64,000 nt of DNA from positions 1 to 64,000 of the IMG/VR virus record IMGVR_UViG_3300009104_001210. The stretch is one strand, 5' to 3'. Made by a program: the position numbers and the translations under genes. Below are positions 1,852 to 51,990 of this stretch, piece after piece; position 1 is the first letter of the stretch; each line of letters opens with the position of its first letter. The notes under the pieces were generated by a model. That model was not told where the DNA came from. It did no database searches and saw nothing but the letters and a program-made list of their open reading frames with translations.

Positions 1852-2014
1852 AGAAACACCCGTCGTTAAATGTGATTGCCCAGAATGTTCGGATACTTGT
1901 AAAAGAGATTATCCATGCCAAAGTAATGGTTGTGATTGTGATTGTTGTTGTCATGCTTCTGAATCTGGTTATTACACCATAACAGATAAAATGAAAGAAA
2001 AGGCTAATGGCTAG
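1844..2014 (+). CDS. Small Cys-rich protein (56 aa, 10 Cys), metallothionein-like or RiPP-precursor-like; not in the ORF track
   Basis: AAGGAG at 1831-1836 and ATG at 1844. Translation MPEETPVVKCDCPECSDTCKRDYPCQSNGCDCDCCCHASESGYYTITDKMKEKANG*. Overlaps both neighbours by 8 nt and fills the gap between them. Confidence 0.8.
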   Translation: MPEETPVVKCDCPECSDTCKRDYPCQSNGCDCDCCCHASESGYYTITDKMKEKANG

Positions 2015-2975
2015 AAGTAATGGAGATACTTTAGGATTAGGAGAAATGGGGTATGCAACCGGCGATAGCGCCAATACTACCACAACGGTAAGTATGCAGG
2101 ATACTTCAGGAGGAACATCTACAGTTTCATTTGATGATTTTGGAATTGATGCTTGTACTAATCCAACAGCCAATGATAGTAATGCTTTACATCCAGAAGA
2201 TACTGCTGAAACTTATACTGCAAATTTTACATCTGCAGGTTCACTTTTTTTATCTAAAATAGGAAATCAAACTCGTAATTTTACTTGGTCTATTTCCCCA
2301 GATGTCGGAGCATTTACATCAGCTGATGTAGGTGCGATATATACAGCACCATTAGTATCTTCAGATACAGCTGCAACTATATCATATAAATTTCATGATT
2401 CGTTTAATGATCACGCAACAGATTATAATACAAATAAATCAATAAGTATAACTATTACAGATACATATGGAGCAGGATGCTTTTCTTTAGATACTAAAAT
2501 TTTGTTATCTGATGGAACGGAAAAAGAAATACAAGATTTAGATATGTCTGATAAGTTAATGGGGATGAAAATGCCAGGTATGCCAACAAAAGGAAAATCA
2601 GCTGATGATTGGCATACCTATGCAAGTTGGACTACAAGCTCTATTGATTTATTTGAAACTTGTGAAGTTGAAATAGAAAGTTTGTGGTTTGATTATTTTG
2701 AAAGTTATTATAAGATTACTACAGAAGAAGATAAAGTTTTAACTGTAACATATGAACACCCTCTTTTTATATTGAGAGAAGGAATTTATCAATGGACACA
2801 TGCTCAAACTTTACAAGAAACAGATAAACTTGTAAATTATAAAAAAGAAGTAGTATCAATAACCAATATAGAGTTTAGAGATGAAGAACTTGAAACTTGT
2901 AATGTTGATGTTGAACCCGAAGACGTTTATTTTGCAGAACATTTTTTAGTGCATAATACTTTTCATGATAAATAG
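2007..2975 (+). CDS. Virion-associated-type protein with C-terminal Hint (intein-like) domain ending HN-T
   Basis: C158 (GAG-CFSLDTKILLSDG), block B VTYEHP, block F/G CNVDVEPEDVYFAEHFLVHN317, then TFHDK*. N-terminal part is S/T/D/G-rich and paralogous to 4029..5144. Confidence 0.85.
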   Translation: MARSNGDTLGLGEMGYATGDSANTTTTVSMQDTSGGTSTVSFDDFGIDACTNPTANDSNALHPEDTAETYTANFTSAGSLFLSKIGNQTRNFTWSISPDVGAFTSADVGAIYTAPLVSSDTAATISYKFHDSFNDHATDYNTNKSISITITDTYGAGCFSLDTKILLSDGTEKEIQDLDMSDKLMGMKMPGMPTKGKSADDWHTYASWTTSSIDLFETCEVEIESLWFDYFESYYKITTEEDKVLTVTYEHPLFILREGIYQWTHAQTLQETDKLVNYKKEVVSITNIEFRDEELETCNVDVEPEDVYFAEHFLVHNTFHDK

Positions 2976-2987
2976 GGATAGTATCAT

Positions 2988-3992
2988 ATGAGTTATGATG
3001 TTTATTATAGTACAGGTGGTGGTTCACTTATTATGGGGGGATCTGATGTATGGGTTAATTATTGGTTACAAAATATAGCACCAAAATTAAAACGACCATC
3101 TAAGTTATTAATTCATAGAGCACCAAATTCAATTGTAGAATTTGATTCACCAATTGAAGTTGTTTGGCAAAATGAACCTGAAGTATTTAAAAAAGTATTA
3201 GGAGAAGCTGAAAGAATTCATATTTTACATGGTTATTATCATCCTAAAAAAGAAATAATGGATAATTTGGATAAAATTTATTCTAATATCTTACACGTAA
3301 CAGTAGAAAAATCTTTACGAGCAGGTGTTTATTTAGGATTAAAAAAGTTGAAACATTTTGCTGCAAATATATCTTATGAAAAAGAAATATTAAAAGCATC
3401 TAAAAATAATATATGGATTGGAGTAGATGATACAACATATCATAAAGATAATGATATAATTGATATTCCAAATTTTTATGAATTTAAGAGAAAAAAAGAT
3501 GTGGTTATGAATGATAGAGTTGGATTTTTAGCTAGAATGGAAACAAGAAAAGCACCACACTTTATAAACGATATAGATTCTTGCATGCTTACAGATATAA
3601 GTGATGTTCAATGGTGGAGAGATAATTTAGAATTTCAATGGAATAAAACAAAAGTATTTCAATTTCAATATAAAAATTTACAAAAGTTTTTAGAAAGGGA
3701 TGATTGGGGAATATCACATTCAGCTCACGTATATGAACCATTTGGCTATTCTATATTTGAAGCAATTGATTATGGTAAGTTACCAATATTAGCAGCTGAT
3801 TGGTTATTTGGTAAGTTAGAGTATCCTTTTAGAGCAGCAAATAAACAAGAATTTGAAAATACACATTCTCAAATTTGTAAACTGAGTGAAAAAGAAAGAC
3901 AGTATTGGTTATTAAAGTTAAGAGCTTATTTATCAAGATATGATAATAAAGATGAATGGATCAACAAATATTTGGAAATATACAATTCTTGA
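2988..3992 (+). CDS. GT-B glycosyltransferase, GT4-like
   Basis: N-terminal GGSDVW loop. C-terminal EPFGYSIFEA (E-x7-E) followed by GKLPIL. Confidence 0.7.
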   Translation: MSYDVYYSTGGGSLIMGGSDVWVNYWLQNIAPKLKRPSKLLIHRAPNSIVEFDSPIEVVWQNEPEVFKKVLGEAERIHILHGYYHPKKEIMDNLDKIYSNILHVTVEKSLRAGVYLGLKKLKHFAANISYEKEILKASKNNIWIGVDDTTYHKDNDIIDIPNFYEFKRKKDVVMNDRVGFLARMETRKAPHFINDIDSCMLTDISDVQWWRDNLEFQWNKTKVFQFQYKNLQKFLERDDWGISHSAHVYEPFGYSIFEAIDYGKLPILAADWLFGKLEYPFRAANKQEFENTHSQICKLSEKERQYWLLKLRAYLSRYDNKDEWINKYLEIYNS

Positions 3993-4028: not shown

Positions 4029-5144
4029 ATGGCAACAGATGCAAATCAAGATTTATCGTTAGGAAAACTGAGAAGAGCGGTAGATGGAAATGACTCATAT
4101 ACAGCAGAATCTAAATTAGGAGAAGATGCTGGCGGCACTACTTCTGCAGATTCAGATGTAGGAATGTCCAATTTTTCTATTTCAGCAGTTAGTTCAACTC
4201 TTTCTGGAAGTAAACACCAAGATGAAGGTACAGCTGAAACCGTAACAATGGAATTTTCAGATGCAGGTTCAAGGTTTATTTCACGAATAGCTGGTCGTTC
4301 TGAGAACTTTACTTGGGCAAAAAACAACGCCGTTGGTTCAGGAACTTATACAATAGAATCTGGAGATTATACGGCGACGGGAACAGCAGGTGCTATTTCT
4401 AGTGTAGATACAGCAAATACAGTAGGTGATGGTGTTAGGGGAACATTTCATGCTGCACATACAGGAGATTGGCGAGTAGGAATTAGTGCTTCATTTCATG
4501 AAGATGGACAATCAGATGGATATAATGATCACGCAACAAGATATAATACTGCTATAAAGAAAAAAACTCAAGTAGAAGACGTATATAATAGTGTTGCTAT
4601 AACTTGTTTTACACCTGATACTGAAATGCTTATGGCAGATGGAACATCTAAACAGATACAAGATGTACTTATTGGTGATGAGATTGTTGCTATGACATTA
4701 CCAAACGATGTAGAAGATTTTAAAGATTATAGTGTTGATAGTATAGATGGATTAGAACAAACTACAGCAAAAGTTGTTAATATGTTCTTTGATTTTGCTG
4801 ATGAGTATTATATTATTAATGGTGATATTAAAGTAACAGGAGAACATCCTATTTTTATTCAGGTTCCTGAAGGATTTTATGTAGATGTTGAAGATTCTTC
4901 TGAATTTTATTGTTGGGAATATGTTGTTAACTTGAAAGTTGGTCAAATTATGTATAATAAGAATTTGAATGAAGTTCCAATTGATGTTATTGAGAAAGTA
5001 GAAAAAGAAATAGAAATTGTAAATGTAGATGTTGATGGTCCAAATACATATTTTGCAGGTGGAGTATTGGTTCATAATAAAGGAGCAGCATCAGTATCAG
5101 ATACAGGTGATGGAATAGGACACTCATTTACTGAAGACGGATAG
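4029..5144 (+). CDS. Virion-associated-type protein with C-terminal Hint (BIL-A-like) domain ending HN-K
   Basis: C193 (AIT-CFTPDTEMLMADG), VTGEHP, VNVDVDGPNTYFAGGVLVHN350 plus a 21-aa tail. Shares AGS.F(L/I)S(K/R)I......NFTW and NDHAT.YNT with 2007..2975. Confidence 0.85.
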   Translation: MATDANQDLSLGKLRRAVDGNDSYTAESKLGEDAGGTTSADSDVGMSNFSISAVSSTLSGSKHQDEGTAETVTMEFSDAGSRFISRIAGRSENFTWAKNNAVGSGTYTIESGDYTATGTAGAISSVDTANTVGDGVRGTFHAAHTGDWRVGISASFHEDGQSDGYNDHATRYNTAIKKKTQVEDVYNSVAITCFTPDTEMLMADGTSKQIQDVLIGDEIVAMTLPNDVEDFKDYSVDSIDGLEQTTAKVVNMFFDFADEYYIINGDIKVTGEHPIFIQVPEGFYVDVEDSSEFYCWEYVVNLKVGQIMYNKNLNEVPIDVIEKVEKEIEIVNVDVDGPNTYFAGGVLVHNKGAASVSDTGDGIGHSFTEDG

Positions 5145-5209: not shown

Positions 5210-6793
5210 ATGGATAATAGGTTAGCAATAATTGTTCCTTATCGAGATAGAAGAAAACAGTTAGATGTTTTCATTCCGCATATGGATTCCTTTTTTCAAA
5301 ATAAAGGAATTGATTATCAGATAATAGTAGCAGAACAAAGAGATGATAGGCCTTTTAACAGAGGTAAATTATGTAACGCCGTGTTTGATTTAATTAAAGA
5401 CGACTTTGATTATTTTTGCTTTCACGACGTAGACTTGTTGCCATTAACAGATGATTGTGATTATTCTTATGTAGATAAACCAACTCATGTAGCAGCTATC
5501 ATTGACGATGTATATCTACCATATGAAGAGTTTATTGGTGGAGTATTCTTAATCAATAAAGAGCATTTCGAACAAATTAATGGATTTTCTGATGAATATT
5601 GGGGATGGGGATATGAAGATAATGATTTGTTAGAAAGAATGAGAAAAAATGATATTCCATTAAATACAGTTATAGATATTTCTTCTGTTTCAAAAAATCC
5701 AAGATATTCTTTTGATCAAGTACATTTACACAATAATTTTAAAACTAAGATATTAAATACTATTAAACTACATGGTGATATTTGTATAGAAGTACCAACA
5801 TCGGATTCTATAGATAATTTAACTAATGGTAGTTTTTCTTTTTCTATTTGGGCAAAACCAACAATAGAAGATTATGAACAATTTATATTATCAAGACCAC
5901 CAATTGGGTTAGGAATGTTATATACAGTAGAAGGTGAATTTAAATTTTTATTGTGGGATGAGAATGATGAAGCTCATGTTATAAAAGATTATAGAATACC
6001 AAATGAATGGTATCATTTATGTATGACATATGATACTAAAACTAAAATGTTTAGTGCATATATTAATGGTTCTTTAATAAAAACGATTAAAGTTGAATCA
6101 TTAAAAAACTTTAGTGGAGAGTGGTTTTATATTGGAGCAGATTCTTCTAATGAAAATAATTTTAGAGGAAGTGTTAGTGAAGCAACATTATGGAATGTTT
6201 GTTTAGATGAAAACGAAACTAAAAAATTATATTTTGAACAAGTAACTAATTTGATACATAGTCCAATAATGTGGCATAAGTTTGATAAGTGTTACGGAAG
6301 TTATATATTAGGTACAGAAGTTAATAGTGGAAATTTTCAAAAAATAAAAGTATATATTATGCTAGATGAATCTACTTATGAAAATAACGGAACAGTTAAA
6401 AGTTTTTCTAAGGAAATAAAACCTCTTCAATCGAAAGCTACAATAAATCCTATATTAGAAAAGATAATATTGGGTACTACTATAAAGATACCTAATAGAA
6501 GATATGGAATTTATAAAACTTTAGTTAATGATAAAACATGGAAAAGAGGAAGACAGGTTACAGATAAAGATTATGTTCATAGTAGAGTAAGACATTATAA
6601 GTCTACTGATGGAAAGGATATTGTAACTAAATTAAAATCATATGATCCAGATATTTTAGAAAATTCAGATATATTTTTTGATGAAGTTAGAGAAGGATCA
6701 GTGATTAATGTTGGTTTAAATAAATTAGATTATAAAGTTAGAAACAGACAAGAATTTGAAGATATTCATGAATGGATAGAAATAATAACATAG
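5210..6793 (+). CDS. GT7 (beta-1,4-galactosyltransferase-like) glycosyltransferase with inserted LamG domain
   Basis: LAIIVPYRDR, FNRGKLCN, FHDVD, GWGYEDND. LamG (FSFSIWAKP...WYHLCMTYD...YINGSL...YIGA...FRGSVSEATLWN). GT7 C-terminus resumes at IPNRRYG and ends GLNKLDY. Confidence 0.85.
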   Translation: MDNRLAIIVPYRDRRKQLDVFIPHMDSFFQNKGIDYQIIVAEQRDDRPFNRGKLCNAVFDLIKDDFDYFCFHDVDLLPLTDDCDYSYVDKPTHVAAIIDDVYLPYEEFIGGVFLINKEHFEQINGFSDEYWGWGYEDNDLLERMRKNDIPLNTVIDISSVSKNPRYSFDQVHLHNNFKTKILNTIKLHGDICIEVPTSDSIDNLTNGSFSFSIWAKPTIEDYEQFILSRPPIGLGMLYTVEGEFKFLLWDENDEAHVIKDYRIPNEWYHLCMTYDTKTKMFSAYINGSLIKTIKVESLKNFSGEWFYIGADSSNENNFRGSVSEATLWNVCLDENETKKLYFEQVTNLIHSPIMWHKFDKCYGSYILGTEVNSGNFQKIKVYIMLDESTYENNGTVKSFSKEIKPLQSKATINPILEKIILGTTIKIPNRRYGIYKTLVNDKTWKRGRQVTDKDYVHSRVRHYKSTDGKDIVTKLKSYDPDILENSDIFFDEVREGSVINVGLNKLDYKVRNRQEFEDIHEWIEIIT

Positions 6794-6801
6794 GAGTTGA
6801 T

Positions 6802-6981
6802 ATGATAAGTATTTTTAACGATGAAAAGAAAGTAATTGAGTTAGAAAGAATAGCGGATTGGTTACATTCTGCAACTTCAACTATGAAATTTAATAAAAGT
6901 ATGTCTCAATTTGTTATTTGGACAAATTTATTAAAATTAATGTTTACTAATGAAGTAGATAAGGAGAATACAAATGGCTAA
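6802..6981 (+). CDS. Hypothetical protein (59 aa)
   Basis: AGGAG RBS before ATG 6802 (track start 6772). Coupled to neighbours. Confidence 0.55.
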   Translation: MISIFNDEKKVIELERIADWLHSATSTMKFNKSMSQFVIWTNLLKLMFTNEVDKENTNG

Positions 6982-7186
6982 AACATTAGAAGAAAGAGGA
7001 GTAGATGCTTTAGAAAAGATATCTGAATCCTTACAAACTATAGAAGATGCCGTATTGGAGTTTGATGTTCCAGCATGGAGCGAAAGATTAGAATGGTATA
7101 TGAATGAATACTATGCTATTTTAAAAGCTAAAGTTGTTGGAAATCCAAATAGACCATCTCGTGATAGAGATGTAAATGAGTCATAA
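6974..7186 (+). CDS. Hypothetical protein (70 aa)
   Basis: AAGGAG RBS. Overlaps both neighbours. Confidence 0.65.
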   Translation: MAKTLEERGVDALEKISESLQTIEDAVLEFDVPAWSERLEWYMNEYYAILKAKVVGNPNRPSRDRDVNES

Positions 7187-8654
7187 TATAGGTCCACTCG
7201 GATTAAGATCACTTAATCCTAAGTTAGCAATAATAGTACCTTATAGAGATAGAAAGAAGCAGCTTGATAAATTTATAAAGCACATGACGAACTTCTTTCT
7301 AGATACGGATGTAAAGTATCATATATTTGTAATAGAACAAGAAGATGATAAACCATTTAATCAAGGAAAGTTATTAAATGTTGGGTTTTCTTTAGCAGAA
7401 CACGATTTTAATTATTTTTGTTTCCATGATGTAGATTTACTTCCCGAAAAGGATTGTGATTATTCGTATCCTGATGATAAACCATTACACTTAGGTGGGT
7501 TTACAAGTGAATATGATTACGAATTACAGTTTCAAGACTATTTTGGTGGAGTAACTTTGTTTAGAAAAGAAGATTATGAAGCAGCAAATGGTAGGTCAAA
7601 TAACTATTGGGGGTGGGGATTTGAAGATGATGATTTATTGTTTAGATGTAAACAAGCAGGACTTCCAATTGACACAAAGTTTTTTGGTGTAGCTAAAACA
7701 AACTGTTATTCTTATCTTGAGTTTGATGGATATGATGATTTTGTTGAAATAAAAGTTACAGATGAACTAAAAGAATTAACAAAAGATAGTTTCTCAGTAA
7801 CAGTTTCTATACATCCAGAATTACAACACCAAGTAGAAGATATTCCATACGATGAACATTTTGCTTTTTCTATACCTGGCTATCATTGTGGTTTATCTTA
7901 TACAAGTCATAGAAGATATAAAGCAGATATATTTGATTCTAATATAAAATCACAAGCAGTTCTTACAGATATAGAAACAGAATATTTTAATCATTTAACT
8001 ATGGTTTATAATAAGGAAATAGATAGATTTTTATTTTATCAAAATGGAAAATTAGTAGATTCTACAAGAATTGAAAAATTATATGATTATACTAAAGAAG
8101 AGTATTTATATTTAGGATGTGCTAATCCAGCAAATAAAGAATATTCATATAACTTTAAAGGTAAGATAGTAGAAGTTGCTATTTGGAATAACGCATTGGA
8201 TGAGGGAGATGTGAGTTCTTTATATAAAAATAATTTTGTAAGAAGTTTGACTACAAACTTTTTTGATTATAGAAGTTCGGAAAGCTTAGTTTTATATTAT
8301 GATTTTAAACATATAGTTGGAAATCAAGTTTTTGATAATAGTGGATGGTATAATAATGGTGTTATACATGGAGCAACTAACGGTAGTAAAATAGGCAAGA
8401 GAGGAAGATGGTTAACTGTACCTCATAGAAGATATGGTAGATATACTTCACAACAACATTCAAAATCAGCATGGGCAGCAGAAGGTTTACATTGGTTATA
8501 TTCAGAAACAAGAGATAATCAAACAAGATTTTTTAATAAAGTTAAAACAGGTTATGAAGATTGGCATATTGATGGATTAAATACTTTAAAATATTCATTA
8601 AATTCAAGAGAAGAGTTATCAGATAAAGCAACTATATTTAAAGTGGAATTATAA
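7176..8654 (+). CDS. GT7 glycosyltransferase with inserted LamG domain
   Basis: IIVPYRDR, FNQGKLLNVG, FHDVD, YFGGV, GWGFEDDD. LamG insert. Resumes TVPHRRYGRY...DGLNTLKY. Confidence 0.88.
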   Translation: MSHNIGPLGLRSLNPKLAIIVPYRDRKKQLDKFIKHMTNFFLDTDVKYHIFVIEQEDDKPFNQGKLLNVGFSLAEHDFNYFCFHDVDLLPEKDCDYSYPDDKPLHLGGFTSEYDYELQFQDYFGGVTLFRKEDYEAANGRSNNYWGWGFEDDDLLFRCKQAGLPIDTKFFGVAKTNCYSYLEFDGYDDFVEIKVTDELKELTKDSFSVTVSIHPELQHQVEDIPYDEHFAFSIPGYHCGLSYTSHRRYKADIFDSNIKSQAVLTDIETEYFNHLTMVYNKEIDRFLFYQNGKLVDSTRIEKLYDYTKEEYLYLGCANPANKEYSYNFKGKIVEVAIWNNALDEGDVSSLYKNNFVRSLTTNFFDYRSSESLVLYYDFKHIVGNQVFDNSGWYNNGVIHGATNGSKIGKRGRWLTVPHRRYGRYTSQQHSKSAWAAEGLHWLYSETRDNQTRFFNKVKTGYEDWHIDGLNTLKYSLNSREELSDKATIFKVEL

Positions 8655-9592
8655 TGGAAAAAATAAATAATATGAATGTTTTAATAACAGGAGGAGCGGG
8701 GTTTATAGGATCTACTTTTATTAAAAAATTACATAAATATCCTACTTTTGAAAAAGCTGGTAATTTTATATCTTTGGATAACTATTCTACAGGTACAAAA
8801 GATAATCATCTTAGAGATGATAAAAATAAAAAAATGACGGGTATAGAAGAAAAATATGTATCAGGAGATATTGGAAATCCACACCGTGATCCTGATGAAT
8901 ATAGGGAACTTGCTGGTGGTTGGGTACATTCTAGGAGAACAGGGGCAATATTTGATAATTTAATTGATTGTAATTTAACACAAGGAGATGAAAAGGAATA
9001 TGGAACACACCAAAGACTTGGTAATCCAGATTTAATAGTACATTTTGCTGATGTTCCAAGAATAACAGATACTACAAAACCATTTACAGAATATCAAAAT
9101 AAAGATTATCCATCAGATTTATTTGATACTAATGTTGTTGGAACTAAAAATATACTTGAATTTGCAAGACATGGACAGCAACCTGAAGATCGTGAAAAGA
9201 GAAAATCTTGGGGTTGGAAAAATATAGATTATTCACAAGTGTTTTATATTGGTTCTACTCCAGACAAAACTTTTTATCAGAATGATCACACATTTACTAA
9301 ATGGCAAGGAGAAGAATTGTGCAAATTTTATTATAAAACATTTGGTATGAATATTGGAATTTTTAAATTTGGAAAAGTTTTTGGTGATGAACATAAAATT
9401 CAAAAAGATAATAATTTTTATATAGGTGGTAAAGCAAGTGTTTATGATGTGGGATCAGGAGTTTATAATGATAAAGATAGAATACACGTTGATGATGTTT
9501 GTATGCAATTATTATCAATGATAGGTAAAGATCTTGGTGGAAAAACTTATCATTTAAGTGCTAATTTGGATTGGATGGATGAGTACTTATAA
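8654..9592 (+). CDS. NAD-dependent epimerase/dehydratase (extended SDR), atypical
   Basis: ITGGAGFIGS Rossmann motif. LDNYSTG; TNVVGT.NILE. The YxxxK position reads HTFTK. Confidence 0.75.
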   Translation: MEKINNMNVLITGGAGFIGSTFIKKLHKYPTFEKAGNFISLDNYSTGTKDNHLRDDKNKKMTGIEEKYVSGDIGNPHRDPDEYRELAGGWVHSRRTGAIFDNLIDCNLTQGDEKEYGTHQRLGNPDLIVHFADVPRITDTTKPFTEYQNKDYPSDLFDTNVVGTKNILEFARHGQQPEDREKRKSWGWKNIDYSQVFYIGSTPDKTFYQNDHTFTKWQGEELCKFYYKTFGMNIGIFKFGKVFGDEHKIQKDNNFYIGGKASVYDVGSGVYNDKDRIHVDDVCMQLLSMIGKDLGGKTYHLSANLDWMDEYL

Positions 9593-10607
9593 TAAATCAG
9601 ATATATTAAATTTTAAAAAACACTTTGATATAAAAACACAATCTCTTTTAACAAAAAATTTTAATGTAATACCTTATCATGAAAAAGTATTAACACCACT
9701 TATACAATCTTCAAAAAAGAACACAATTTTAAATTTAGGAGAATTTTTTGAAAATCAAATTTTTGATACAGCAAATTTGGTTAATCTTCATAAATTTTTA
9801 GAAAAAATAGGTTCATTAAATAATATTATATTGCTTAGTGAAGATTGTAATTTTGAAAAATTATATGAAGAGTGGTGTGAAAAAAGGAAAATTAAAAATA
9901 GAGTTAATGTTATTGGGTATCCATTTCTTTTTTATGAAAGAGCTAGAGAGTATCTTATATATTTTAAAGAGAATTACAAAATATTGAGATATGAAGATAG
10001 AGATGAGTTACCAACTAAAAAGTTTATGTGTTTAATGGGCAGAACAATGGAAGATAGAAATTCTCTTTATTATTTTTTTAAAAAAAGAGATTTATTTGAT
10101 AATAATTATATCAGTTATCTTGGTAGACGGATGATATTACCTGATAGTGGTAATATTAATTTAATAGGTATAGGAAATTCTACAGCAGAAACAGATAATT
10201 TAGGATTCTATTTTAAGGATTCTTATTTTTCAGTAATCCCAGAAACAGAACTTTGGTATGCTAGTCCACATTCATTATTTTTTACAGAAAAAACAACTAA
10301 AGTATTATATCATGGTCATCCGTTTATTATTTTGAGTTCTGTGGGAGCATTAAAACAATTAAGAGAGTGGGGATTCGAAACTTTTCCTGAATTATTTGAT
10401 GAAAGTTATGATGAGATAGAGAAACCATTTGATAGAATAGAGTTTATTAAAAAAGAAATTATGAAATTAATAACTATGGATGAAAAAAAATTATTAAAAT
10501 TATGTAAAAGTGTTGAAGATAAATGTATTCATAATAAAGAAGTTTTATTTAGTTTAAAAGTAATAGAAGAAAAAGTGTATAAAAAATTATCGAGTATGTG
10601 TATATGA
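9579..10607 (+). CDS. GT10-like (alpha-1,3-fucosyltransferase-motif) GT-B protein, paralogue 1
   Basis: KKFMCLMGR; YFSVIPET...FFTEKTTK..HGHPFI...GFETFPELFDESYD, resembling the GT10 Y.F....EN....Y.TEK motif. Start moved to ATG 9579. Confidence 0.55.
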   Translation: MSTYNKSDILNFKKHFDIKTQSLLTKNFNVIPYHEKVLTPLIQSSKKNTILNLGEFFENQIFDTANLVNLHKFLEKIGSLNNIILLSEDCNFEKLYEEWCEKRKIKNRVNVIGYPFLFYERAREYLIYFKENYKILRYEDRDELPTKKFMCLMGRTMEDRNSLYYFFKKRDLFDNNYISYLGRRMILPDSGNINLIGIGNSTAETDNLGFYFKDSYFSVIPETELWYASPHSLFFTEKTTKVLYHGHPFIILSSVGALKQLREWGFETFPELFDESYDEIEKPFDRIEFIKKEIMKLITMDEKKLLKLCKSVEDKCIHNKEVLFSLKVIEEKVYKKLSSMCI

Positions 10608-12070
10608 AAAGGAAAGGAGCAACAAAAAAATGGAAGGAAAAGAAAAAACTTCATGGAGAAATGTATGTAGATGCATTTGATACTGGAATTGAATATTATA
10701 GTTCTAATATAGGAAAAGAATTGAAATATTTAAAAGATGAATGGAATATGTCATATTTGGGAGTGATATGGGGATATGCAAAATCATTTAAAAAAGAAAC
10801 TTGGGATTGGTTAATAGAAAATACTTTTATATTTCCAGATGTAGCAAGATTAAAGAAAGATATATCAGATAGTTTACATCCAGAACTTTTTAATTTTTCA
10901 TATGAAGTGATAAAAAAATTAAATAAACATTTTATTACGATTATTGAAGATACTGAAGGTCATTGTATACAACTTAAAGTACCTGAAAAAGTACATAAAG
11001 TTTGTGAAAAAACAGAAATTCCTGTAGAAAAAATATTAATAATTACTAATGATATTAATGCTAAATCTGATTATGATAATTGGTTTGAAAAAATAAAAAA
11101 ATATGAAACAAAACTTAATATTGTAAGTTATCCTTGTTTTGTAAATAGAATGGTAGGGGATTTTTATGAAAAAATAGCAAAAAGTTTATATAAAGAACAT
11201 TCAAGTACTAGATTTGGTCGTACTACACTTGAATCGGGTATAACTATTCCTATTATTGATATTAAAGAACACATTTATAAACCGAAACGCAGATTAAAAC
11301 CAAATAAGAAATTTATATGTCTTATGGGAAGAGGTACAGATGATAGAAGTTTTTTTTGGGAATATTTTCAAAATGGTGTTAATGTTGATATTTTAAATAC
11401 AATGATTAAACGAATTAAATCCAGAAAATTATCTACAAAATGGGGGAAAGTTGTTGATCCAAAAACAAATTATATTTCTTTTGATGCTTTTAACTATGCA
11501 GTTTTTAAAACAAAACATAAGAAAGAGAACAAAGAAATAGCAAATTTATTACAAGAAAGTGGTCATATATCTTATGTTGCAGAAGATGTAATTTTAGAAA
11601 ATAGTTATGAAGATATAGATACTGGAAATTCCTTAACGCCCAGAGAAAATATTTTGTATGGTAGGTCAGGACCATTAACAGATAAGTTAGAATACTATTA
11701 TGAAGATTCTTATTTTTCTATAGTACCAGAATGTGTAAGTGGAACAATGTTATCAGAAAAGTGGGTAAAACCTATATATCATGGACACCCATTTATGATT
11801 TTATCGCCACTTGGGTGTGGAATATTAAAGAAGATGAGAGAGTGGGGATTTGAAACTTTTCCAGAAATATTTGATGAATCATATGATGAAATGGATAATA
11901 GATTAGATAGAGTGTCTCATATAGAAAATGAAATTTTAAGATTGTGTAAAATGGATATGAAAGAATTACAAAAGTTGCGTGATTCTGTATATGAAAAACT
12001 TGTCCATAATCAGAAAACTTTATTTGATATGAAATTAACACAAAAACCCTTTACGGATATATTAAAATGA
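10604..12070 (+). CDS. GT10-like GT-B protein, paralogue 2
   Basis: KKFICLMGR; YFSIVPEC...LSEKWVKP..HGHPFM...GFETFPEIFDESYD. ATGA overlap at 10604-10607. Confidence 0.55.
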   Translation: MKRKGATKKWKEKKKLHGEMYVDAFDTGIEYYSSNIGKELKYLKDEWNMSYLGVIWGYAKSFKKETWDWLIENTFIFPDVARLKKDISDSLHPELFNFSYEVIKKLNKHFITIIEDTEGHCIQLKVPEKVHKVCEKTEIPVEKILIITNDINAKSDYDNWFEKIKKYETKLNIVSYPCFVNRMVGDFYEKIAKSLYKEHSSTRFGRTTLESGITIPIIDIKEHIYKPKRRLKPNKKFICLMGRGTDDRSFFWEYFQNGVNVDILNTMIKRIKSRKLSTKWGKVVDPKTNYISFDAFNYAVFKTKHKKENKEIANLLQESGHISYVAEDVILENSYEDIDTGNSLTPRENILYGRSGPLTDKLEYYYEDSYFSIVPECVSGTMLSEKWVKPIYHGHPFMILSPLGCGILKKMREWGFETFPEIFDESYDEMDNRLDRVSHIENEILRLCKMDMKELQKLRDSVYEKLVHNQKTLFDMKLTQKPFTDILK

Positions 12071-13479
12071 AAGAACATTACTTAGGAGTATGTATTCCTT
12101 ATAGAGATAACGGAGATGGTGTAAGAAAAAAACATTTAGATACATTAGTTCCTTATCTTACTAAGTTTCTCGATGAAAGGAATATAAAACATAAAATGTT
12201 TATTGGTCATCAAGTAGATGATAAGTTATTTAATCGTAGTGGTACAAAGAATGCCGCATTTTTAGCAGCTAAAGAAGAGGGTTGTGATTATGTAGCATTT
12301 CATGATGTAGATATGTTGCCCGAAGACGGAGCAGATTACAGCTATCCCGAAGACAACCCAATCCACATAGCAACCTATCTATCTCAATGGGATTACAATC
12401 TCAGAGATGTAGAATACTTTGGTGGAGTTGTGTTGTTTACTATAGAGCAGTTTGAAGCAGTCAATGGATATCATACCAATTATTGGGGTTGGGGTATGGA
12501 AGATGATGACTTGTTTTGGAGATGTCATTTAAAGGGAATGACAAACGATAGATATGTTGAAGGACCAGGTGAAACAAATATTTGTACACTAAATGGTGAA
12601 TCAGATTTTATACAAATACCTTCTTCTAGAACGCTTCATAGTATTGGTAGTAGAAGTCATGAAATTGAGTTATTAGTAAGACCACATCAGTTTGCTGAAA
12701 AACAATATTTGATAGGAGATGAAAATAAAAAATATATTGAATATCCTATTTTTATTAGATATGGTTGGGATTATAGTATAAGTTATAATAATTCAAAAGC
12801 TATATCAAGTATGATTTGGACTTGGAAAAATGATTTATTATATAATTGGGCTAAAAGATATCCGAATGAATGGACATTAGTTAATGTAAAAGTTGATGAT
12901 GTTAAAAGAGAAATTAGATTGTTAATTAATGGAGAAGAAACAGATGCACGACATGGAACAGGAACAGAATCACCATTAGTATATAATATGCCACTTAAAA
13001 GATATGGTGGGTCTCCGATTTATCTTGGTAAAGCAAATAGTAATAATGCAAAACAACAAAATTTTATGGGAGATATAGCACATATTAAAATAAAAAATAA
13101 TAGAGATAAAGTAGTTTTACATTATGACTTTGATGAAGTTATAGATAATATAGTTATTGATAAGAGTGGTAATGATAATAATGGAATTATGAATGGTTGT
13201 GAGATAAAAAAGGAAGTTGTTGATAAAATACCATTTACAGTTGTACCACATAGAAGGTTTAGTAAATTTGAATGTTTATTTCATGAAGATGAAGGTATTG
13301 TTAAAGGAAATTTTGTGAGTGATACTACACCTAGAAATGAAAGAATATATAAGTTAAAGATGCAACAGAAAAAAATAGATATAGATACAGATGAGTATGG
13401 AGTAAAAAATATGGAATATGAATTAGTTAGTATAGAAGATTGTTATAATTATCATAAAATGGTTAATGTAAAGTTCTAA
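12067..13479 (+). CDS. GT7 glycosyltransferase with inserted LamG domain
   Basis: VCIPYRD, FNRSGTKN, FHDVD, YFGGV, GWGMEDDD. LamG insert. Resumes VVPHRRFSKF...GVKNMEY. Confidence 0.88.
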   Translation: MKEHYLGVCIPYRDNGDGVRKKHLDTLVPYLTKFLDERNIKHKMFIGHQVDDKLFNRSGTKNAAFLAAKEEGCDYVAFHDVDMLPEDGADYSYPEDNPIHIATYLSQWDYNLRDVEYFGGVVLFTIEQFEAVNGYHTNYWGWGMEDDDLFWRCHLKGMTNDRYVEGPGETNICTLNGESDFIQIPSSRTLHSIGSRSHEIELLVRPHQFAEKQYLIGDENKKYIEYPIFIRYGWDYSISYNNSKAISSMIWTWKNDLLYNWAKRYPNEWTLVNVKVDDVKREIRLLINGEETDARHGTGTESPLVYNMPLKRYGGSPIYLGKANSNNAKQQNFMGDIAHIKIKNNRDKVVLHYDFDEVIDNIVIDKSGNDNNGIMNGCEIKKEVVDKIPFTVVPHRRFSKFECLFHEDEGIVKGNFVSDTTPRNERIYKLKMQQKKIDIDTDEYGVKNMEYELVSIEDCYNYHKMVNVKF

Positions 13480-15008
13480 TGAGTAATTACGAACATGAAA
13501 GAATAAAGAAAGTTTTACCTCAAATAGAGGCAAAGACTTCACCAACATTTTGTCTTGCTAAATGGCACCATGTTACTATCTATCTACATTTAGGTGAAAC
13601 TCATAGTTGTTATCACCCACAACCACACGCAATTTCTTTAGAAGAGTTAAAAAACAATCCTTCAGCATTACATAATACCGTACAAAAGAAGTTTGAAAGA
13701 AAGCAGATGTTAGAGGGTAAGAAACCTGAAGGATGTACTTATTGTTGGAATGTAGAAGCATTAGGTGAAGATTATATAAGTGATAGGAAACAAAGAACTC
13801 TTTCTATATATGAGGGAGATAAGAGTAGATTAGATGATATTATAAATAATCCCTGGGATATGAATGTTAATCCTGAATATATCGAACTTTCTTTTGGTAA
13901 TCAATGTAATTTTAAATGTGGTTATTGTCATCCAAGATATAGTTCAAGATTTTATGATGAAATTAAAGAATATGGTTCTTATTACAAAAATTATACAGGC
14001 AAATATGATGTTGAGTGGTTTGAAGATAGGTTATATAAAAATGATGAAGATAATCCATATGTAAAGGCTTGGTGGAAATGGTGGCCAGAAGTTTCTAAGA
14101 CATTAAATATATTGAGAATTACAGGTGGTGAACCAACAATTCATGGTAGTACTTATAGATTATTAGATGAGATTAATAAAAACCCTATGCCAAATCTTGA
14201 ATTGAATATAAATTCTAATCTTGGTGCAAATCCAAAACTTTTTGATAAATTTGTAGAGAAGTTAAAACCAATTATAGAAGAAAAGAAAGTTAGAGAGTTC
14301 AAGTTATTTACTTCTATAGATAGCTGGGATAAACCTAAAGCTGAATATATGAGATATGGTTTAGATTTAGATTTATTTGAAAGAAATTTTAATAAGTATT
14401 TAACTGAAATTGATAATTCAAAATTATCTTTAATGATAACATTTAATAACTTATGTGTTTCTAACTTTGATTCTTTATTAGAACAAATATTAGTGTGGAG
14501 AGAAAAATATAATACTAAAGCAGCTAGAGAAAAAGGAAATGTTAATCAACCTATACCTTTACAGAGAATTCAAATAGATACACCATATTTAAAAGAACCG
14601 CCACATTATGATATGAATATTTTACCTAAAGAAGAGTTTACACATTATATGGATGATCATTTAAAGTTTATGATTGACAATCAAGATGATGAGGATAATA
14701 CAAAATTTAGAACTATAGAAGTTGAAAAATTTAGAAGGGTTGTAGATTATTTTAAAAGTTCAGAGATAGAACATAGACCATATCCAACCGTTGAGGAATA
14801 TATTAAGAAAGGAAGAAGTGATTTTTATAATTTTTTTAAGGAACACGATAATAGAAGGGGAACAAATTTTTTAAAATCTTTTCCCGAATACACAGAGTTT
14901 TTTAATTCTTGTAAGAGTGAAATAATTAATACTGCTAGAAGTTCTAGGTTAGCTGAAAAAAGAATGAGATTATTAGAGAGAAGGAGAAAAAATGATAAAA
15001 CTAATTAA
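13479..15008 (+). CDS. Radical SAM protein with N-terminal twitch-like Fe-S domain
   Basis: FCLAKW...HSCYHP...GCTYCW precedes NQCNFKCGYC (CxxxCxxC). ITGGEP, NSNL. Confidence 0.88.
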   Translation: MSNYEHERIKKVLPQIEAKTSPTFCLAKWHHVTIYLHLGETHSCYHPQPHAISLEELKNNPSALHNTVQKKFERKQMLEGKKPEGCTYCWNVEALGEDYISDRKQRTLSIYEGDKSRLDDIINNPWDMNVNPEYIELSFGNQCNFKCGYCHPRYSSRFYDEIKEYGSYYKNYTGKYDVEWFEDRLYKNDEDNPYVKAWWKWWPEVSKTLNILRITGGEPTIHGSTYRLLDEINKNPMPNLELNINSNLGANPKLFDKFVEKLKPIIEEKKVREFKLFTSIDSWDKPKAEYMRYGLDLDLFERNFNKYLTEIDNSKLSLMITFNNLCVSNFDSLLEQILVWREKYNTKAAREKGNVNQPIPLQRIQIDTPYLKEPPHYDMNILPKEEFTHYMDDHLKFMIDNQDDEDNTKFRTIEVEKFRRVVDYFKSSEIEHRPYPTVEEYIKKGRSDFYNFFKEHDNRRGTNFLKSFPEYTEFFNSCKSEIINTARSSRLAEKRMRLLERRRKNDKTN

Positions 15009-15096: not shown

Positions 15097-16332
15097 ATGA
15101 GTATTAGAGAAAAATATAAAAAGTTAAAAGGATCTAAGGTTTTTTGTATGATGCCCTGGATACATACACACGTGTGGCCAAGTGGTAAAGCATTTCCTTG
15201 TTGTATGTCGGATAGTACAGTTGAATATGGTAATTTAAATGATAATAGTTTAGCAGAGATTTGGAATGATGAAAAGTATAAACAACTTCGTTTAAATATG
15301 TTAAATGAAAAAGAAAGTTTAGAATGTAATAGATGTTATGAAATGGAGAAATCCAATGTGTGGACTTTACGAAAAATGGTAAATCAGACATATGATAAGC
15401 ATTGGGATAGAGTAGAGACAACACAAGATGATGGTACGGTAGAAGAAGTAAATATGGGATATATGGATATTAGAGTTTCTAATATATGTAATTTCAGATG
15501 TAGAACTTGTGGTCCAGAGTTGAGTAGTGCTTGGCATGAAGATCATATTAAACTTTATGGAGAAAAACCACAATGGCCTAAGATAATGAATATAGCAAAT
15601 AATGAAAGGTTTTGGAAAGATTTACAACCATTATTATTTACGGTAGAGGAAGCGTGTTGGGCAGGTGGAGAACCAATTATTACAGAAGAACATTATAAGA
15701 TATTAGATTTTTGGGTTGAAAATAACATGAAAGATGTTAGATTAAGATATACAACAAATTTTAGTAATCTTTATTTTAAGAAAAAAAGTATATTAGAGTA
15801 TTGGAATTCTTTTAATGATGTTAGAATAGCTGCAAGTCTTGATGCTATGGGTAAAAGAGGTGAGTTGATTAGGGCAGGAATGGAATGGAATGTTATAGAA
15901 GACAATCGTAGACAAATGATAAAAGAATGTCCTGATGTATATTTTGAAATAACACCTACAGTTAGTATTATGAATGTGTATCATCTACCAGACTTTCATA
16001 AGGATTGGGTAGATAAAGAACTTTTAGAACCAAATAATATAAGAGTAAATATATTAACACATCCAGAAGATTATAGAATACAAATTATACCAAAAGAAGA
16101 AAGAAAGAAATTTATAGACAAGTATAATGAACATATAAAATGGATTGATGATAATTTTGGTGAAGGTGTTGCTAAAAATGGATTTATGTCTATATTAGAT
16201 TTTTTAGAACAAGGTAATTATGAAGATAGTATATCTAATTTTATTAATAGAAATAAAGCATTAGATAAAACAAGAGAAGAATCTTTATTTGATGTTTGTA
16301 CTGAATTAAAGTTTTTAAAAGATTATGAATAG
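15097..16332 (+). CDS. Radical SAM protein with N-terminal twitch domain
   Basis: FCMMPW...GKAFPCC...ECNRCY; NICNFRCRTC; AGGEP; YTTN; SLDA. Confidence 0.9.
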   Translation: MSIREKYKKLKGSKVFCMMPWIHTHVWPSGKAFPCCMSDSTVEYGNLNDNSLAEIWNDEKYKQLRLNMLNEKESLECNRCYEMEKSNVWTLRKMVNQTYDKHWDRVETTQDDGTVEEVNMGYMDIRVSNICNFRCRTCGPELSSAWHEDHIKLYGEKPQWPKIMNIANNERFWKDLQPLLFTVEEACWAGGEPIITEEHYKILDFWVENNMKDVRLRYTTNFSNLYFKKKSILEYWNSFNDVRIAASLDAMGKRGELIRAGMEWNVIEDNRRQMIKECPDVYFEITPTVSIMNVYHLPDFHKDWVDKELLEPNNIRVNILTHPEDYRIQIIPKEERKKFIDKYNEHIKWIDDNFGEGVAKNGFMSILDFLEQGNYEDSISNFINRNKALDKTREESLFDVCTELKFLKDYE

Positions 16333-51989: not shown

Positions 51990-51990
51990 T

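What the first reader, a model, noticed from the sequence alone, without database searches (positions are those of the whole stretch)
5210..13479. Three GT7 enzymes whose catalytic domain is split by an inserted LamG (lectin-fold) domain
Seen: in 5210, 7176 and 12067 the GT7 sequence runs to GWGxEDDD-L..R. About 230-250 aa of LamG follow, then GT7 resumes at (I/V)P(N/H)RR(Y/F) and ends with a (D)GLN.L.Y-type motif. Established: in mammalian B4GALT1 these two pieces are contiguous, just before the mobile loop that forms the acceptor site, and GT7 is mainly a eukaryotic family. Inference: the lectin insert may select a protein or glycan acceptor. The three divergent inserts could give three different acceptor specificities.
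Basis: partly seen in the sequence, partly recalled or inferred. Interest (0 to 1): 0.7.

Follow-up and report, generated by a model that had tools for sequence, protein, structure and literature searches.

The report
Phage galactosyltransferase-like enzymes with nested lectin-fold domain
A widespread uncultured marine phage lineage carries three sugar-transferring enzymes of a mostly animal type (GT7), each interrupted near its active-site lid by a lectin-like domain, an arrangement I found described in no paper.

Summary
ORFs 5210-6793 (A), 7176-8654 (B) and 12067-13479 (C) each match GT7N, a truncated GT7C and Laminin_G_3. An insert of about 233-276 aa sits between the GWGxEDDD helix and the P(H/N)RR...His segment.

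AlphaFold models of B and C (pLDDT 90 and 93) superpose both halves on one contiguous B4GALT1 catalytic domain (Z 27.6 and 27.7, 217-218 residues). The insert is a LamG/pentraxin jelly roll (Z 16-23). An un-inserted bacterial homologue bridges the post-insert piece to B4GALT1 by sequence.

The window is the first 64 kb of a 216-kb T4-like marine phage. The trio recurs in fixed order in 61 of the 95 fetched loci that carried any match (80 of them phage loci), as three orthogroups, followed by N-terminal-twitch radical SAM genes and sugar-tailoring genes. B and C keep every catalytic residue. A is degenerate in many phages.

Best reading: soluble Mn-dependent inverting glycosyltransferases whose nested LamG docks the acceptor, building a phage-specific glycan, probably on a phage protein. 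The acceptor role is inference. LamG conservation is low and shows no fixed differences between orthogroups. Verdict: new variant of a known kind.

The parts
5210..6793 (+). Paralogue A (527 aa), first gene of the trio. GT7 N part about 5210-5659, LamG insert about 5660-6487, GT7 C part about 6488-6793.
   Evidence: Pfam matches and motifs. Orthogroup A has 65 members, always the first gene, support 0.97. The window's copy keeps the xED Asp (GWGYEDND) but has Asn in place of the C-terminal His. In the orthogroup the Asp is W/Y in 19 of 65 members.
6974..7186 (+). Conserved 70-aa protein between A and B. Helical N part and a near-invariant C-terminal RP..D.ER motif.
   Evidence: The family occurs between A and B in 61 of 64 loci. 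No Pfam or PHROG match. It overlaps the start of B. Identical short contigs occur in two RNA libraries over 6797-7074 (weak).
7176..8654 (+). Paralogue B (492 aa). GT7 N part 7176-7667, LamG insert 7668-8417, GT7 C part 8418-8654.
   Evidence: Pfam. B4GALT7 in PDB at E 2e-37 over residues 15-166. AF2 pLDDT 89.6, pTM 0.85. VIA B4GALT1 Z 27.6; LamG matches Z 18-23. All catalytic residues are conserved in the 81-member orthogroup.
8654..9592 (+). SDR-type nucleotide-sugar epimerase/dehydratase-like gene, lying between B and C in this phage only.
   Evidence: Pfam Epimerase 2.7e-11. PHROG 540 nucleotide-sugar epimerase 1.4e-16. In most other loci B and C are adjacent or overlapping.
9558..12070 (+). 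Two paralogous genes (9558-10607 and 10598-12070) of a phage-only family with a GT10-like FxTEK...G.P motif. Possible fucosyltransferase-like glycosyltransferases.
   Evidence: Paralogy at E 5e-44. No Pfam match. The nearest Pfam-bearing Atlas clusters are Glyco_transf_10 at 0.80-0.81, a lead only. Three more paralogues lie at 23583-27978.
12067..13479 (+). Paralogue C (470 aa), last gene of the trio. GT7 N part 12067-12543, LamG insert 12544-13242, GT7 C part 13243-13479.
   Evidence: Pfam. AF2 pLDDT 93.3, pTM 0.89. VIA B4GALT1 Z 27.7, 217 aligned, model 1-470; insert 168-388 matches LamG folds at Z 16-19. Orthogroup C has 81 members, support 0.995.
13479..15008 (+). N-terminal-twitch radical SAM gene. 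Its start overlaps the stop of C by one base.
   Evidence: NCBIfam NF033640, 310 bits against a cut-off of 170. The family follows the trio in 78 of 80 loci. Three further copies lie at 15097, 17632 and 22331.
2988..3992 (+). Conserved 334-aa protein upstream of the trio, with a GT-B (GT4-type) EX7E-like motif.
   Evidence: Present in 60 of 80 loci. The motif was read by eye. No Pfam, NCBIfam or PDB match.

Best explanation
A, B and C are soluble cytoplasmic glycosyltransferases of the GT7 (beta-1,4-galactosyltransferase) type, encoded by a 216-kb T4-like marine phage.

Anatomy. Each has a GT-A catalytic domain with the DxD motif, the WGWG-xED motif carrying the catalytic Asp, and the C-terminal metal-binding His. 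A LamG/pentraxin-type beta-sandwich of about 233-276 aa is nested in the loop that follows the xED helix. That is about 12 residues before the His and the flexible lid which, in B4GALT1, closes over the donor and forms the acceptor site. The insertion happened once in a bacterial or phage GT7 ancestor. The gene then triplicated, and the three copies have stayed in fixed order.

Mechanism, by analogy. B and C bind a UDP-sugar with Mn2+, and the xED Asp deprotonates an acceptor hydroxyl for inverting transfer. The rigidly docked LamG acts as an extended acceptor-binding platform beside the lid.

Roles. The three enzymes act at different steps or on different acceptors of a phage-specific glycan. 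Its unusual sugars are made by the adjacent enzymes: radical SAM, SDR, RmlC, TPP-dependent, aminotransferase, C-methyltransferase and carbamoyltransferase. The cluster has no membrane, flippase or polymerase proteins and adjoins virion genes. The acceptor is therefore most likely a phage-made protein in the cytoplasm, either a virion component or the conserved 70-aa protein encoded between A and B. A may be a weakly active or non-catalytic partner in many phages.

Shown: the architecture, the fold, residue conservation, gene order and distribution. Inferred: activity, donor, the role of the LamG and the acceptor.
For: - Architecture by Pfam.
- AF2 models at pLDDT 89.6 and 93.3, pTM 0.85 and 0.89. 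The junctions are high-confidence. The only weak stretch in B (residues 431-440, pLDDT 57) follows the His, where the B4GALT1 lid lies.
- Both halves superpose on contiguous B4GALT1 and B4GALT7 at Z 26-28. The insert matches LamG folds at Z 16-23.
- Sequence bridge: the profile of post-insert pieces matches the last 76 aa of un-inserted bacterial L008 (probability 98%, E 1.6e-13). L008 aligns end to end with B4GALT1 at E 2e-39. The alignment gives a clean insertion point.
- Catalytic residues are fully or almost fully conserved in the 81 B and 81 C orthologues.
- There are three orthogroups in fixed order. 61 of the 95 fetched loci with any match carry exactly three genes.
- The neighbourhood is conserved.
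- The window holds a large sugar-tailoring cluster.
- No ORF of 100 aa or more in the window has a transmembrane segment.
- The genome has no ThyA-like or Tet/JBP gene.
- Virion genes flank the cluster.
Against: - No activity, donor or acceptor has been measured.
- LamG is the least conserved part. Only 17, 20 and 54 of 249 columns are 80% conserved within A, B and C. Three columns are shared by all. None is fixed differently between orthogroups. This fits a rapidly changing binding surface, but equally a loosely constrained structural module.
- I had no model coordinates, so the position of the LamG ligand face relative to the active site is unknown.
- Soluble glycosyltransferases can also act on lipid-linked intermediates using host export machinery, so the lack of membrane proteins does not exclude a cell-surface glycan.
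- The complex prediction for B with C gave no answer.
- Paralogue A in the window lacks the C-terminal His.
Confidence: 0.55

Rival explanations
1. The LamG insert is not an acceptor selector. It is a structural, oligomerisation or regulatory module that holds the three enzymes, the radical SAM enzymes or a scaffold together, or that gates the lid allosterically.
For: LamG conservation is low, with no orthogroup-specific fixed residues. Stand-alone LamG proteins matching the insert profile occur in the same cluster in 45 loci. Paralogue A has lost catalytic residues in many phages yet keeps its LamG, as expected for a scaffold subunit. Lectin domains that regulate rather than target are known, for example in MGAT4A (PMC9296478).
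Against: The B plus C complex prediction gave no support, though it is not evidence against either. The insert sits directly next to the lid and acceptor region rather than on a distal face. LamG and pentraxin domains are typically ligand binders.
Confidence: 0.2
2. The enzymes build or alter a host cell-envelope polysaccharide (LPS, capsule or S-layer glycan) during infection, acting on lipid-linked intermediates. The purpose would be superinfection exclusion or receptor masking, not virion glycosylation.
For: Such clusters resemble O-antigen and capsule loci: RmlC, SDR, UDP-Glc dehydrogenases and a DegT aminotransferase. One database source names a homologue 'predicted glycosyltransferase involved in capsule biosynthesis'. 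Most O-antigen glycosyltransferases are soluble or peripheral.
Against: The 64-kb window holds no initiating phosphoglycosyl transferase, flippase, polymerase or ABC exporter, nor any membrane protein. The cluster is embedded between tail-fibre or virion genes and the terminase and portal genes. The phage is a lytic-type T4 relative by its terminase.
Confidence: 0.15
3. The enzymes glycosylate phage DNA as a hypermodification against restriction.
For: T4-like phages classically glucosylate DNA. Phage GT-A enzymes that glycosylate 5hmC are known (bioRxiv 10.1101/2023.12.21.572611).
Against: The complete 216-kb genome has no thymidylate-synthase-like hydroxymethylase and no Tet/JBP dioxygenase (the Tet/JBP search had no positive control). 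The known DNA GT-A enzymes resemble JGT and TarP, not GT7. No nucleic-acid-binding fold appeared among the structural matches.
Confidence: 0.05

Closest known systems
Beta-1,4-galactosyltransferases 1 and 7 (CAZy GT7; PDB 1tvy, 1o0r, 4irq, 3lw6)
   Same: The same GT-A fold (Z 26-28; 33-36% identity over aligned residues for B, 26-32% for C). The same HDVD/DVD, WGWG-EDDD, C-terminal His and DGLN.L.Y motifs. The C-terminal segment after the His is the least confident part of the model, where the flexible lid lies in B4GALT1.
   Different: The catalytic domain is interrupted by a 233-276 aa LamG domain. There is no transmembrane anchor or stem. The proteins are phage-encoded and cytoplasmic. Donor and acceptor are unknown.
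Un-inserted bacterial GT7 homologues (for example L008 in a Vicinamibacterales MAG, L010 in a Myxococcota MAG, L011 in Vibrio nomapromontoriensis)
   Same: 39-50% identity in the N part. The C part aligns at probability 98%. They are soluble and about 230 aa.
   Different: They have a short direct link where the phage proteins carry the LamG domain. They are single genes in bacterial genomes, and one is fused to a B12 radical SAM enzyme (L007).
Polypeptide GalNAc-transferases (GT27) with a ricin-type lectin domain; MGAT4A (GT54) lectin domain
   Same: A GT-A catalytic domain combined with a carbohydrate-binding domain that steers or regulates acceptor use. GT27 is in the same GT-A clade as GT7 (PMC7185993, PMC4432651, PMC9296478).
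   Different: In those enzymes the lectin is appended at the C-terminus on a linker and has a different fold (beta-trefoil). Here a LamG sandwich is nested inside the catalytic domain and appears rigidly docked.
PGAP4 (GT-A with transmembrane segments inserted in the catalytic domain)
   Same: A precedent that the GT-A fold tolerates a large insertion within the catalytic domain (PMC5785973).
   Different: That insert is a membrane hairpin, not a folded lectin-type domain. It belongs to a different family and sits at a different site.
Virus-encoded virion glycosylation systems (chlorovirus and mimivirus glycan machinery; mycobacteriophage capsid and tail glycosylation)
   Same: Virus-encoded cytoplasmic glycosyltransferases with sugar-nucleotide pathways that decorate virion proteins (PMC9614988; Freeman et al. 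2023 as cited in PMC12619734).
   Different: Those systems use other glycosyltransferase families. No nested LamG or GT7 trio is described there. For this phage, virion glycosylation is only inferred.

Membership tests
CAZy GT7 / Pfam Glyco_transf_7N + Glyco_transf_7C | Significant match to both Pfam models above the gathering score | tested here: met
   All three proteins score 51.7-86.1 bits (7N) and 61.4-70.5 bits (7C), against cut-offs of 27 and 23. B4GALT7 and B4GALT1 are the best PDB hits, E 2e-37 to 3.6e-29.
CAZy GT7 / Pfam Glyco_transf_7N + Glyco_transf_7C | GT-A fold that superposes on B4GALT1 or B4GALT7 over the whole catalytic domain | tested here: met
   B and C models: Z 27.6 and 27.7, 217-218 residues, spanning both halves. 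A was not modelled.
CAZy GT7 / Pfam Glyco_transf_7N + Glyco_transf_7C | DxD metal and donor motif, WGWG-xED motif with the catalytic Asp, and C-terminal metal-binding His | tested here: met
   Fully or almost fully conserved in the B and C orthogroups. Exception: the window's A has GWGYEDND and Asn at the His position, and 19 of 65 A orthologues lack the Asp.
CAZy GT7 / Pfam Glyco_transf_7N + Glyco_transf_7C | Contiguous catalytic domain | tested here: not met
   A 233-276 aa insert lies between the xED helix and the His-bearing strand. This is the feature that makes it a variant.
CAZy GT7 / Pfam Glyco_transf_7N + Glyco_transf_7C | Inverting transfer of Gal or GalNAc from a UDP-sugar in beta-1,4 linkage | not testable with these tools
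   Needs enzyme assays.
CAZy GT7 / Pfam Glyco_transf_7N + Glyco_transf_7C | Type II membrane topology with a stem, as in the eukaryotic Golgi enzymes | tested here: not met
   No hydrophobic segment. The Pfam 7N match starts at profile position 47-48 at the protein's N-terminus.
LamG / concanavalin A-like (Pfam Laminin_G_3) | Pfam match above the gathering score | tested here: met
   A 75.3 bits and B 44.2 bits pass. C at 24.7 bits is below the 27.6 cut-off.
LamG / concanavalin A-like (Pfam Laminin_G_3) | Two-sheet jelly-roll sandwich superposable on LG, LNS and pentraxin domains | tested here: met
   B insert 176-412: PAPP-A LG Z 22.9, 4dqa Z 22.8, PTX3 Z 20.4, CRP Z 18. C insert 168-388: PAPP-A Z 19.1, laminin LG5 Z 16.2, neurexin LNS Z 16.5.
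LamG / concanavalin A-like (Pfam Laminin_G_3) | Ligand or Ca2+ binding site on the sandwich rim | not tested
   No model coordinates were available to map conserved residues. Conservation in the insert is low.
Lectin-bearing GT-A enzymes of the GT27 ppGalNAc-T type | C-terminal ricin-type lectin domain on a flexible linker | tested here: not met
   The extra domain is a nested LamG, not an appended beta-trefoil. The resemblance is functional only.

The most novel reading that the evidence does not exclude
The GT7-LamG trio, the conserved 70-aa protein encoded between A and B, and the N-terminal-twitch radical SAM enzymes together form a new phage-encoded protein or peptide glycosylation system. 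The LamG inserts recognise a phage polypeptide: the small protein with its invariant C-terminal RP..D.ER tail, or the cleaved Ser/Thr-rich N-domains of the Hint-type virion proteins. A heavily tailored glycan is then built on it stepwise in the cytoplasm. That would be a bacterial-virus counterpart of giant-virus glycan machinery, with a carrier or RiPP-like logic.
Probability: 0.12. Interest if true: 0.85.

Novelty: new variant of a known kind. Interest (0 to 1): 0.62.

Why it matters
GT7 enzymes are textbook animal Golgi enzymes, and their acceptor specificity is set by a mobile lid or, in lactose synthase, by a separate partner protein. Here a large, globally recurrent group of uncultured marine phages carries three soluble GT7 enzymes. 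In each, a lectin-fold domain has been built into the catalytic domain right next to that lid.

If the insert steers acceptor choice, it is a natural example of specificity engineering by domain insertion in a GT-A enzyme. It would also be a handle for glyco-engineering.

The surrounding cluster of about 45 kb (at least nine radical SAM enzymes, C-methyltransferases, a carbamoyltransferase and many sugar-nucleotide enzymes) implies that tailed phages can make elaborate glycans of their own. So far this is documented mainly for giant viruses and a few mycobacteriophages. It would bear on phage-host recognition, on phage stability in sea water and on what marine phage particles look like to their hosts and to grazers.

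Tried and rejected
- tblastn of B and megablast of 20 kb against 50,697 deposited phage genomes: no match. The family is absent from cultured and deposited phages, and PHROGs has no family for it.
- The post-insert piece alone, and a profile of 34 such pieces, against PDB sequences: not significant. The B4GALT1 C-terminus was the best sensible hit at E 1.3. The link had to be made through the un-inserted bacterial homologue and through structure.
- Complex prediction of B with C: score 0.00, no answer, not evidence either way.
- T4 late-promoter motif TATAAATA: 17 matches against 21.6 expected, uninformative in this AT-rich DNA.
- P0012 and P0013, which looked like un-inserted close relatives, are misassembled or frameshifted entries.
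- 'Moraphages' (PMC12619734), jumbo aquatic phages with four core glycosyltransferases, were considered as the same lineage. They fall outside the T4 group, whereas this phage's terminase is T4-like (54% to Flavobacterium phage immuto). The identity is not established.
- Intein or mobile-element origin of the insert was rejected: it has a LamG fold, no Hint motifs, and sits at the same site in all 227 genes.
- Full-text searches for Glyco_transf_7C with Laminin_G_3 or with phage, and for related terms, found no description of this architecture.

Full report
**What the window is**

The window is the first 64 kb of a 216,422-bp IMG/VR virus record that CheckV rates complete. GC is 26-32% across most of the window (38% in the first 2 kb), and nearly every gene lies on the + strand.

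The region is flanked by a tail-fibre gene (154-1851) and virion proteins on one side. On the other side lie the large terminase (57149-58726) and the portal (58738-60561). The terminase is T4-like. Its nearest deposited relatives are Flavobacterium phage vB_FspM_immuto and Microcystis phage Mel-JY01, at 53-54% identity.

Near-identical DNA occurs in at least 17 marine or seawater sequencing runs from at least 10 studies, dated 2014-2024. This is a recurrent marine phage.

**Checking the observation**

The three ORFs are intact. All three match Glyco_transf_7N and Glyco_transf_7C well above the Pfam cut-offs. The 7C match stops at profile position 60-65 of 78. A Laminin_G_3 match follows, strong in A and B and sub-threshold in C.

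The best solved relatives are B4GALT7 (E 2e-37) and B4GALT1 (E about 5e-31). They match residues 15-166 of B only. A weak but collinear second stretch pairs residues 438-484 of B with the C-terminal end of B4GALT7.

**Does the post-insert piece complete the enzyme?**

Three independent lines say yes.

1. Structure. AlphaFold2 models were built without templates, from alignments of 40 and 34 family members. They reach pLDDT 89.6 and pTM 0.85 for B, and pLDDT 93.3 and pTM 0.89 for C. VIA-align places model residues 10-492 of B and 1-470 of C on bovine B4GALT1 residues 175/177-398. It aligns 217-218 residues at 2.1-2.8 A, with Z 27.6 and 27.7. B4GALT7 gives Z 26-27. Foldseek aligns about 155 columns of the B model to GT7 structures, roughly the length of the pre-insert part. 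The extra 60 or so residues in the VIA alignment are presumably the post-insert segment.

2. Natural un-inserted homologues. A scan of one genome per prokaryotic species found GT7-like genes without any insert. They occur in Vicinamibacterales, Myxococcota, Elusimicrobia, Desulfuromonadales and Chromatiales MAGs and in Vibrio nomapromontoriensis, at 39-50% identity to the N part of B. In a joint alignment the 229-aa protein of L008 runs straight from ...RCRLSGLE to PYRRLGRYVSLWHE.... B carries about 250 residues between ...RCKQAGLP and VPHRRYGRYTSQQH....

3. Sequence statistics. A profile of 34 post-insert pieces aligns to the last 76 residues of L008 with probability 98% and E 1.6e-13. L008 in turn aligns end to end with the human and bovine B4GALT1 catalytic domain at E 2e-39.

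On its own, the post-insert piece is too short and too diverged to hit PDB significantly.

**What the insert is**

In B, residues 176-412 superpose on the LG domain of PAPP-A (Z 22.9). They also superpose on the Bacteroides carbohydrate-binding protein 4dqa (Z 22.8), PTX3 (Z 20.4), CRP and SAP (Z about 18).

In C, residues 168-388 superpose on PAPP-A (Z 19.1), laminin alpha2 LG5, neurexin LNS and pikachurin LG3 (Z 16-17). So C's insert is a LamG sandwich too, despite the sub-threshold Pfam score.

**Where the insert sits**

The GT-A core motifs described by Taujale et al. (PMC7185993) are DxD, G-loop, xED on helix alpha-F, and the C-terminal His. The insert lies after the xED helix and the short strand that follows it, and about 12 residues before the C-terminal His (H428 in B, H406 in C).

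From my knowledge of bovine B4GALT1 numbering, this corresponds to a point between about Ser331 and Pro335. That is just upstream of Met344 and His347 and of the long flexible loop 345-365. This mapping is not tool-verified residue by residue.

The junctions are modelled with high confidence. The only weak stretch in B (431-440, pLDDT 57) follows the His, where the lid lies. I read this as a rigidly docked LamG next to a still-mobile lid. That is an inference, because I had no coordinates to inspect.

**Distribution and evolution**

- The architecture is common in uncultured phages. Of 1461 database hits, all of the best 120 carry GT7N, LamG and GT7C apart from two misassembled entries. Contigs reach 287 kb.
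- 486 stretches in IMG/VR encode relatives.
- Every ESM Atlas cluster carrying GT7 domains among the nearest hits is labelled Viruses/Uroviricota.
- About 80 of the best 150 representatives at 50% identity are full-length single-stretch matches.
- AlphaFold DB holds one such fold cluster, automatically named 'Galactosyltransferase C-terminal domain-containing protein'.
- The family is absent from 50,697 deposited phage genomes and from PHROGs.
- I found no paper describing it.

Using profiles of the three parts, I found 227 full-architecture genes in the fetched loci. Of the 95 loci with any match (80 of them the phage loci fetched), 61 carry exactly three and 21 carry two.

A tree rooted on un-inserted bacterial proteins gives two clean clades. 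Orthogroup A has 65 members, one per locus, always the first gene, with support 0.97. Orthogroup C has 81 members, almost always the last gene, with support 0.995. The remainder is B, the middle gene.

The insert sits at the same site in all of them. One insertion therefore preceded the triplication, and all three copies have been kept since.

**Catalytic competence**

In the B and C orthogroups the key residues are fully or almost fully conserved. In B numbering these are DxD (H84, D85, D87), W147, E150, D151 (the presumed base), D152, D153, H428 and N448.

Orthogroup A is degenerate. D151 is W or Y in 19 of 65 members, E150 is H or A in 32, W147 is G or Y in 34, and H428 is N in 16. The window's A keeps the Asp but reads GWGYEDND and has Asn at the His position. 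A may therefore be a weak enzyme or a non-catalytic partner in many phages.

**How the parts evolve**

Identity between paralogues is 41-47% in the N part, 25-29% in the C part and 21-24% in LamG. Within orthogroups LamG is also the fastest-evolving part, at 31-47%.

Only 17, 20 and 54 of 249 LamG columns are 80% conserved within A, B and C. Three columns are shared by all. None is fixed differently between orthogroups. This neither proves nor excludes a binding role. It does argue against three simple, universally fixed LamG specificities.

**Genomic context**

The trio belongs to a conserved module.

- Upstream lie a 335-aa protein with a GT-B-type motif (window 2988-3992) and, in most phages, a methyltransferase and a 283-aa protein. 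Both of the latter are absent from this window.
- Between A and B lies a conserved small protein (window 6974-7186). It is present in 61 of 64 loci and has a near-invariant C-terminal RP..D.ER motif.
- Directly downstream come N-terminal-twitch radical SAM enzymes of family NF033640. The window has four copies, all above the family cut-off.
- Further downstream are SDR epimerases, an RmlC-like epimerase, a split TPP-dependent E1 enzyme and a phage-only family with a GT10-like motif.

The window continues to about 52 kb with these genes:
- further B12-dependent radical SAM enzymes, one of them like the KedN5 C-methyltransferase family;
- two UDP-glucose dehydrogenase-like genes;
- 2OG-Fe oxygenases;
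- a PfkB kinase;
- a DegT aminotransferase;
- a carbamoyltransferase.

No ORF of 100 aa or more in the window has a transmembrane segment. I saw no flippase, polymerase or initiating phosphoglycosyl transferase.

The complete genome has no thymidylate-synthase-like gene. A search for Tet/JBP also found nothing, but that search had no positive control.

**Interpretation**

The best-supported reading is a set of soluble, Mn-dependent, inverting GT7-type transferases. Their nested LamG provides an extended acceptor platform beside the lid. They work within a phage-encoded assembly line for an elaborate glycan.

The lack of export machinery, the position next to virion genes and the lack of hydroxymethyl-base genes favour a cytoplasmic phage protein as the acceptor. 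They favour it over a host envelope glycan or phage DNA, but they do not prove it.

The rivals, with my estimates, are:
- a structural or regulatory LamG (about 0.2);
- host envelope modification (about 0.15);
- DNA glycosylation (about 0.05).

The complex prediction for B with C returned no answer. Short contigs identical to parts of gene B and of the small-ORF region occur in three marine RNA libraries. This is only a weak sign of transcription, because DNA carry-over is not excluded.

**Comparison with known systems**

By sequence, fold and motifs these are GT7 members. They fail one family feature, the contiguous domain. They also lack the eukaryotic membrane anchor.

Functionally, the closest analogues are glycosyltransferases with lectin modules: GT27 ppGalNAc-transferases (PMC4432651) and MGAT4A (PMC9296478). 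There the lectin is appended at the C-terminus and has a different fold. PGAP4 shows that a GT-A domain can carry an internal insertion (PMC5785973).

I therefore class the finding as a new variant of a known kind. It is a phage-specific GT7 subfamily with a nested LamG domain, conserved as a trio.

Noticed in passing
window 6974-7186 (+): A conserved 70-aa protein lies between paralogues A and B, in 61 of 64 phage loci and sometimes duplicated. It has a helical N part (EWYL.EF..I.K), a variable spacer and a near-invariant C-terminal RP..D.ER motif. It has no Pfam or PHROG match. It is a candidate acceptor, scaffold or adaptor for the glycosylation system.
   Followed up: partly
window 2007-2975 and 4029-5144 (+): Two paralogous 'virion structural' proteins have a Ser/Thr/Gly-rich N-terminal domain of about 150-190 aa. 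A Hint/bacterial-intein-like module follows, starting with Cys-Phe and ending with His-Asn. This suggests self-cleavage, or transfer of the N-domain.
   Followed up: partly
window 13479-15008, 15097-16332, 17632-19083, 22331-23599 (+): Four paralogous radical SAM enzymes have the auxiliary-cluster (twitch/SPASM) domain at the N-terminus (NCBIfam NF033640, 298-384 bits). The family follows the GT7 trio in 78 of 80 phage loci. Its function is unknown.
   Followed up: partly
window 9558-12070 and 23583-27978 (+): Five paralogues of a phage-only family (349-523 aa) share a C-terminal FxTEK...G.P...WGFETFPE motif reminiscent of GT10 fucosyltransferases. They have no Pfam match. The nearest Pfam-bearing Atlas clusters are Glyco_transf_10 at 0.80-0.81, a lead only.
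   Followed up: partly
window 2988-3992 (+): A 334-aa protein is conserved upstream of the trio in 60 of 80 loci. It carries an EPFG....EA...G.P motif typical of GT-B (GT4) glycosyltransferases, yet no Pfam, NCBIfam or PDB sequence match.
   Followed up: partly
window 19076-22331, 35321-37294, 45857-47002, 48023-49309 (+): Five further radical SAM genes lie in the cluster. Three have a B12-binding domain or B12-family matches, and one of those matches the KedN5 C-methyltransferase family below its cut-off. Together with the four twitch-type enzymes, at least nine radical SAM genes lie within 36 kb.
   Followed up: no
L007:7968-10616: A Desulfomonilaceae chromosome (3.3-Mb contig) encodes an un-inserted GT7 domain fused to a radical SAM enzyme resembling the B12-dependent type (882-aa reading frame). 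It is an independent GT7 and radical SAM association in a bacterium.
   Followed up: no
P0012 (database protein, 506 aa): An 'unnamed protein product' of an ostracod (Cyprideis torosa) assembly is a chain of three GT7 N-halves corresponding to the A, B and C types. It is most likely phage contamination plus misassembly in a eukaryote genome record.
   Followed up: partly
L004:14264-14932 and 16310-17053, and 45 other loci: Stand-alone LamG proteins of about 222-278 aa match the insert profile and sit a few genes downstream of the trio in many phages. There is none in this window.
   Followed up: no
window 51240-52473 (+): A zeta-toxin/AAA_33-like kinase gene (51240-51989) overlaps a GH108 lysozyme with a PG_binding_3 domain (51901-52473), the probable endolysin, at the end of the sugar cluster.
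   Followed up: no
proteins P0121, P0125-P0127 and others: The LamG-insert part of the profile hits giant proteins of 2,000-7,700 aa with up to 27 LamG-like repeats. These are among the closest sequence relatives of the insert outside the GT7 family.
   Followed up: no
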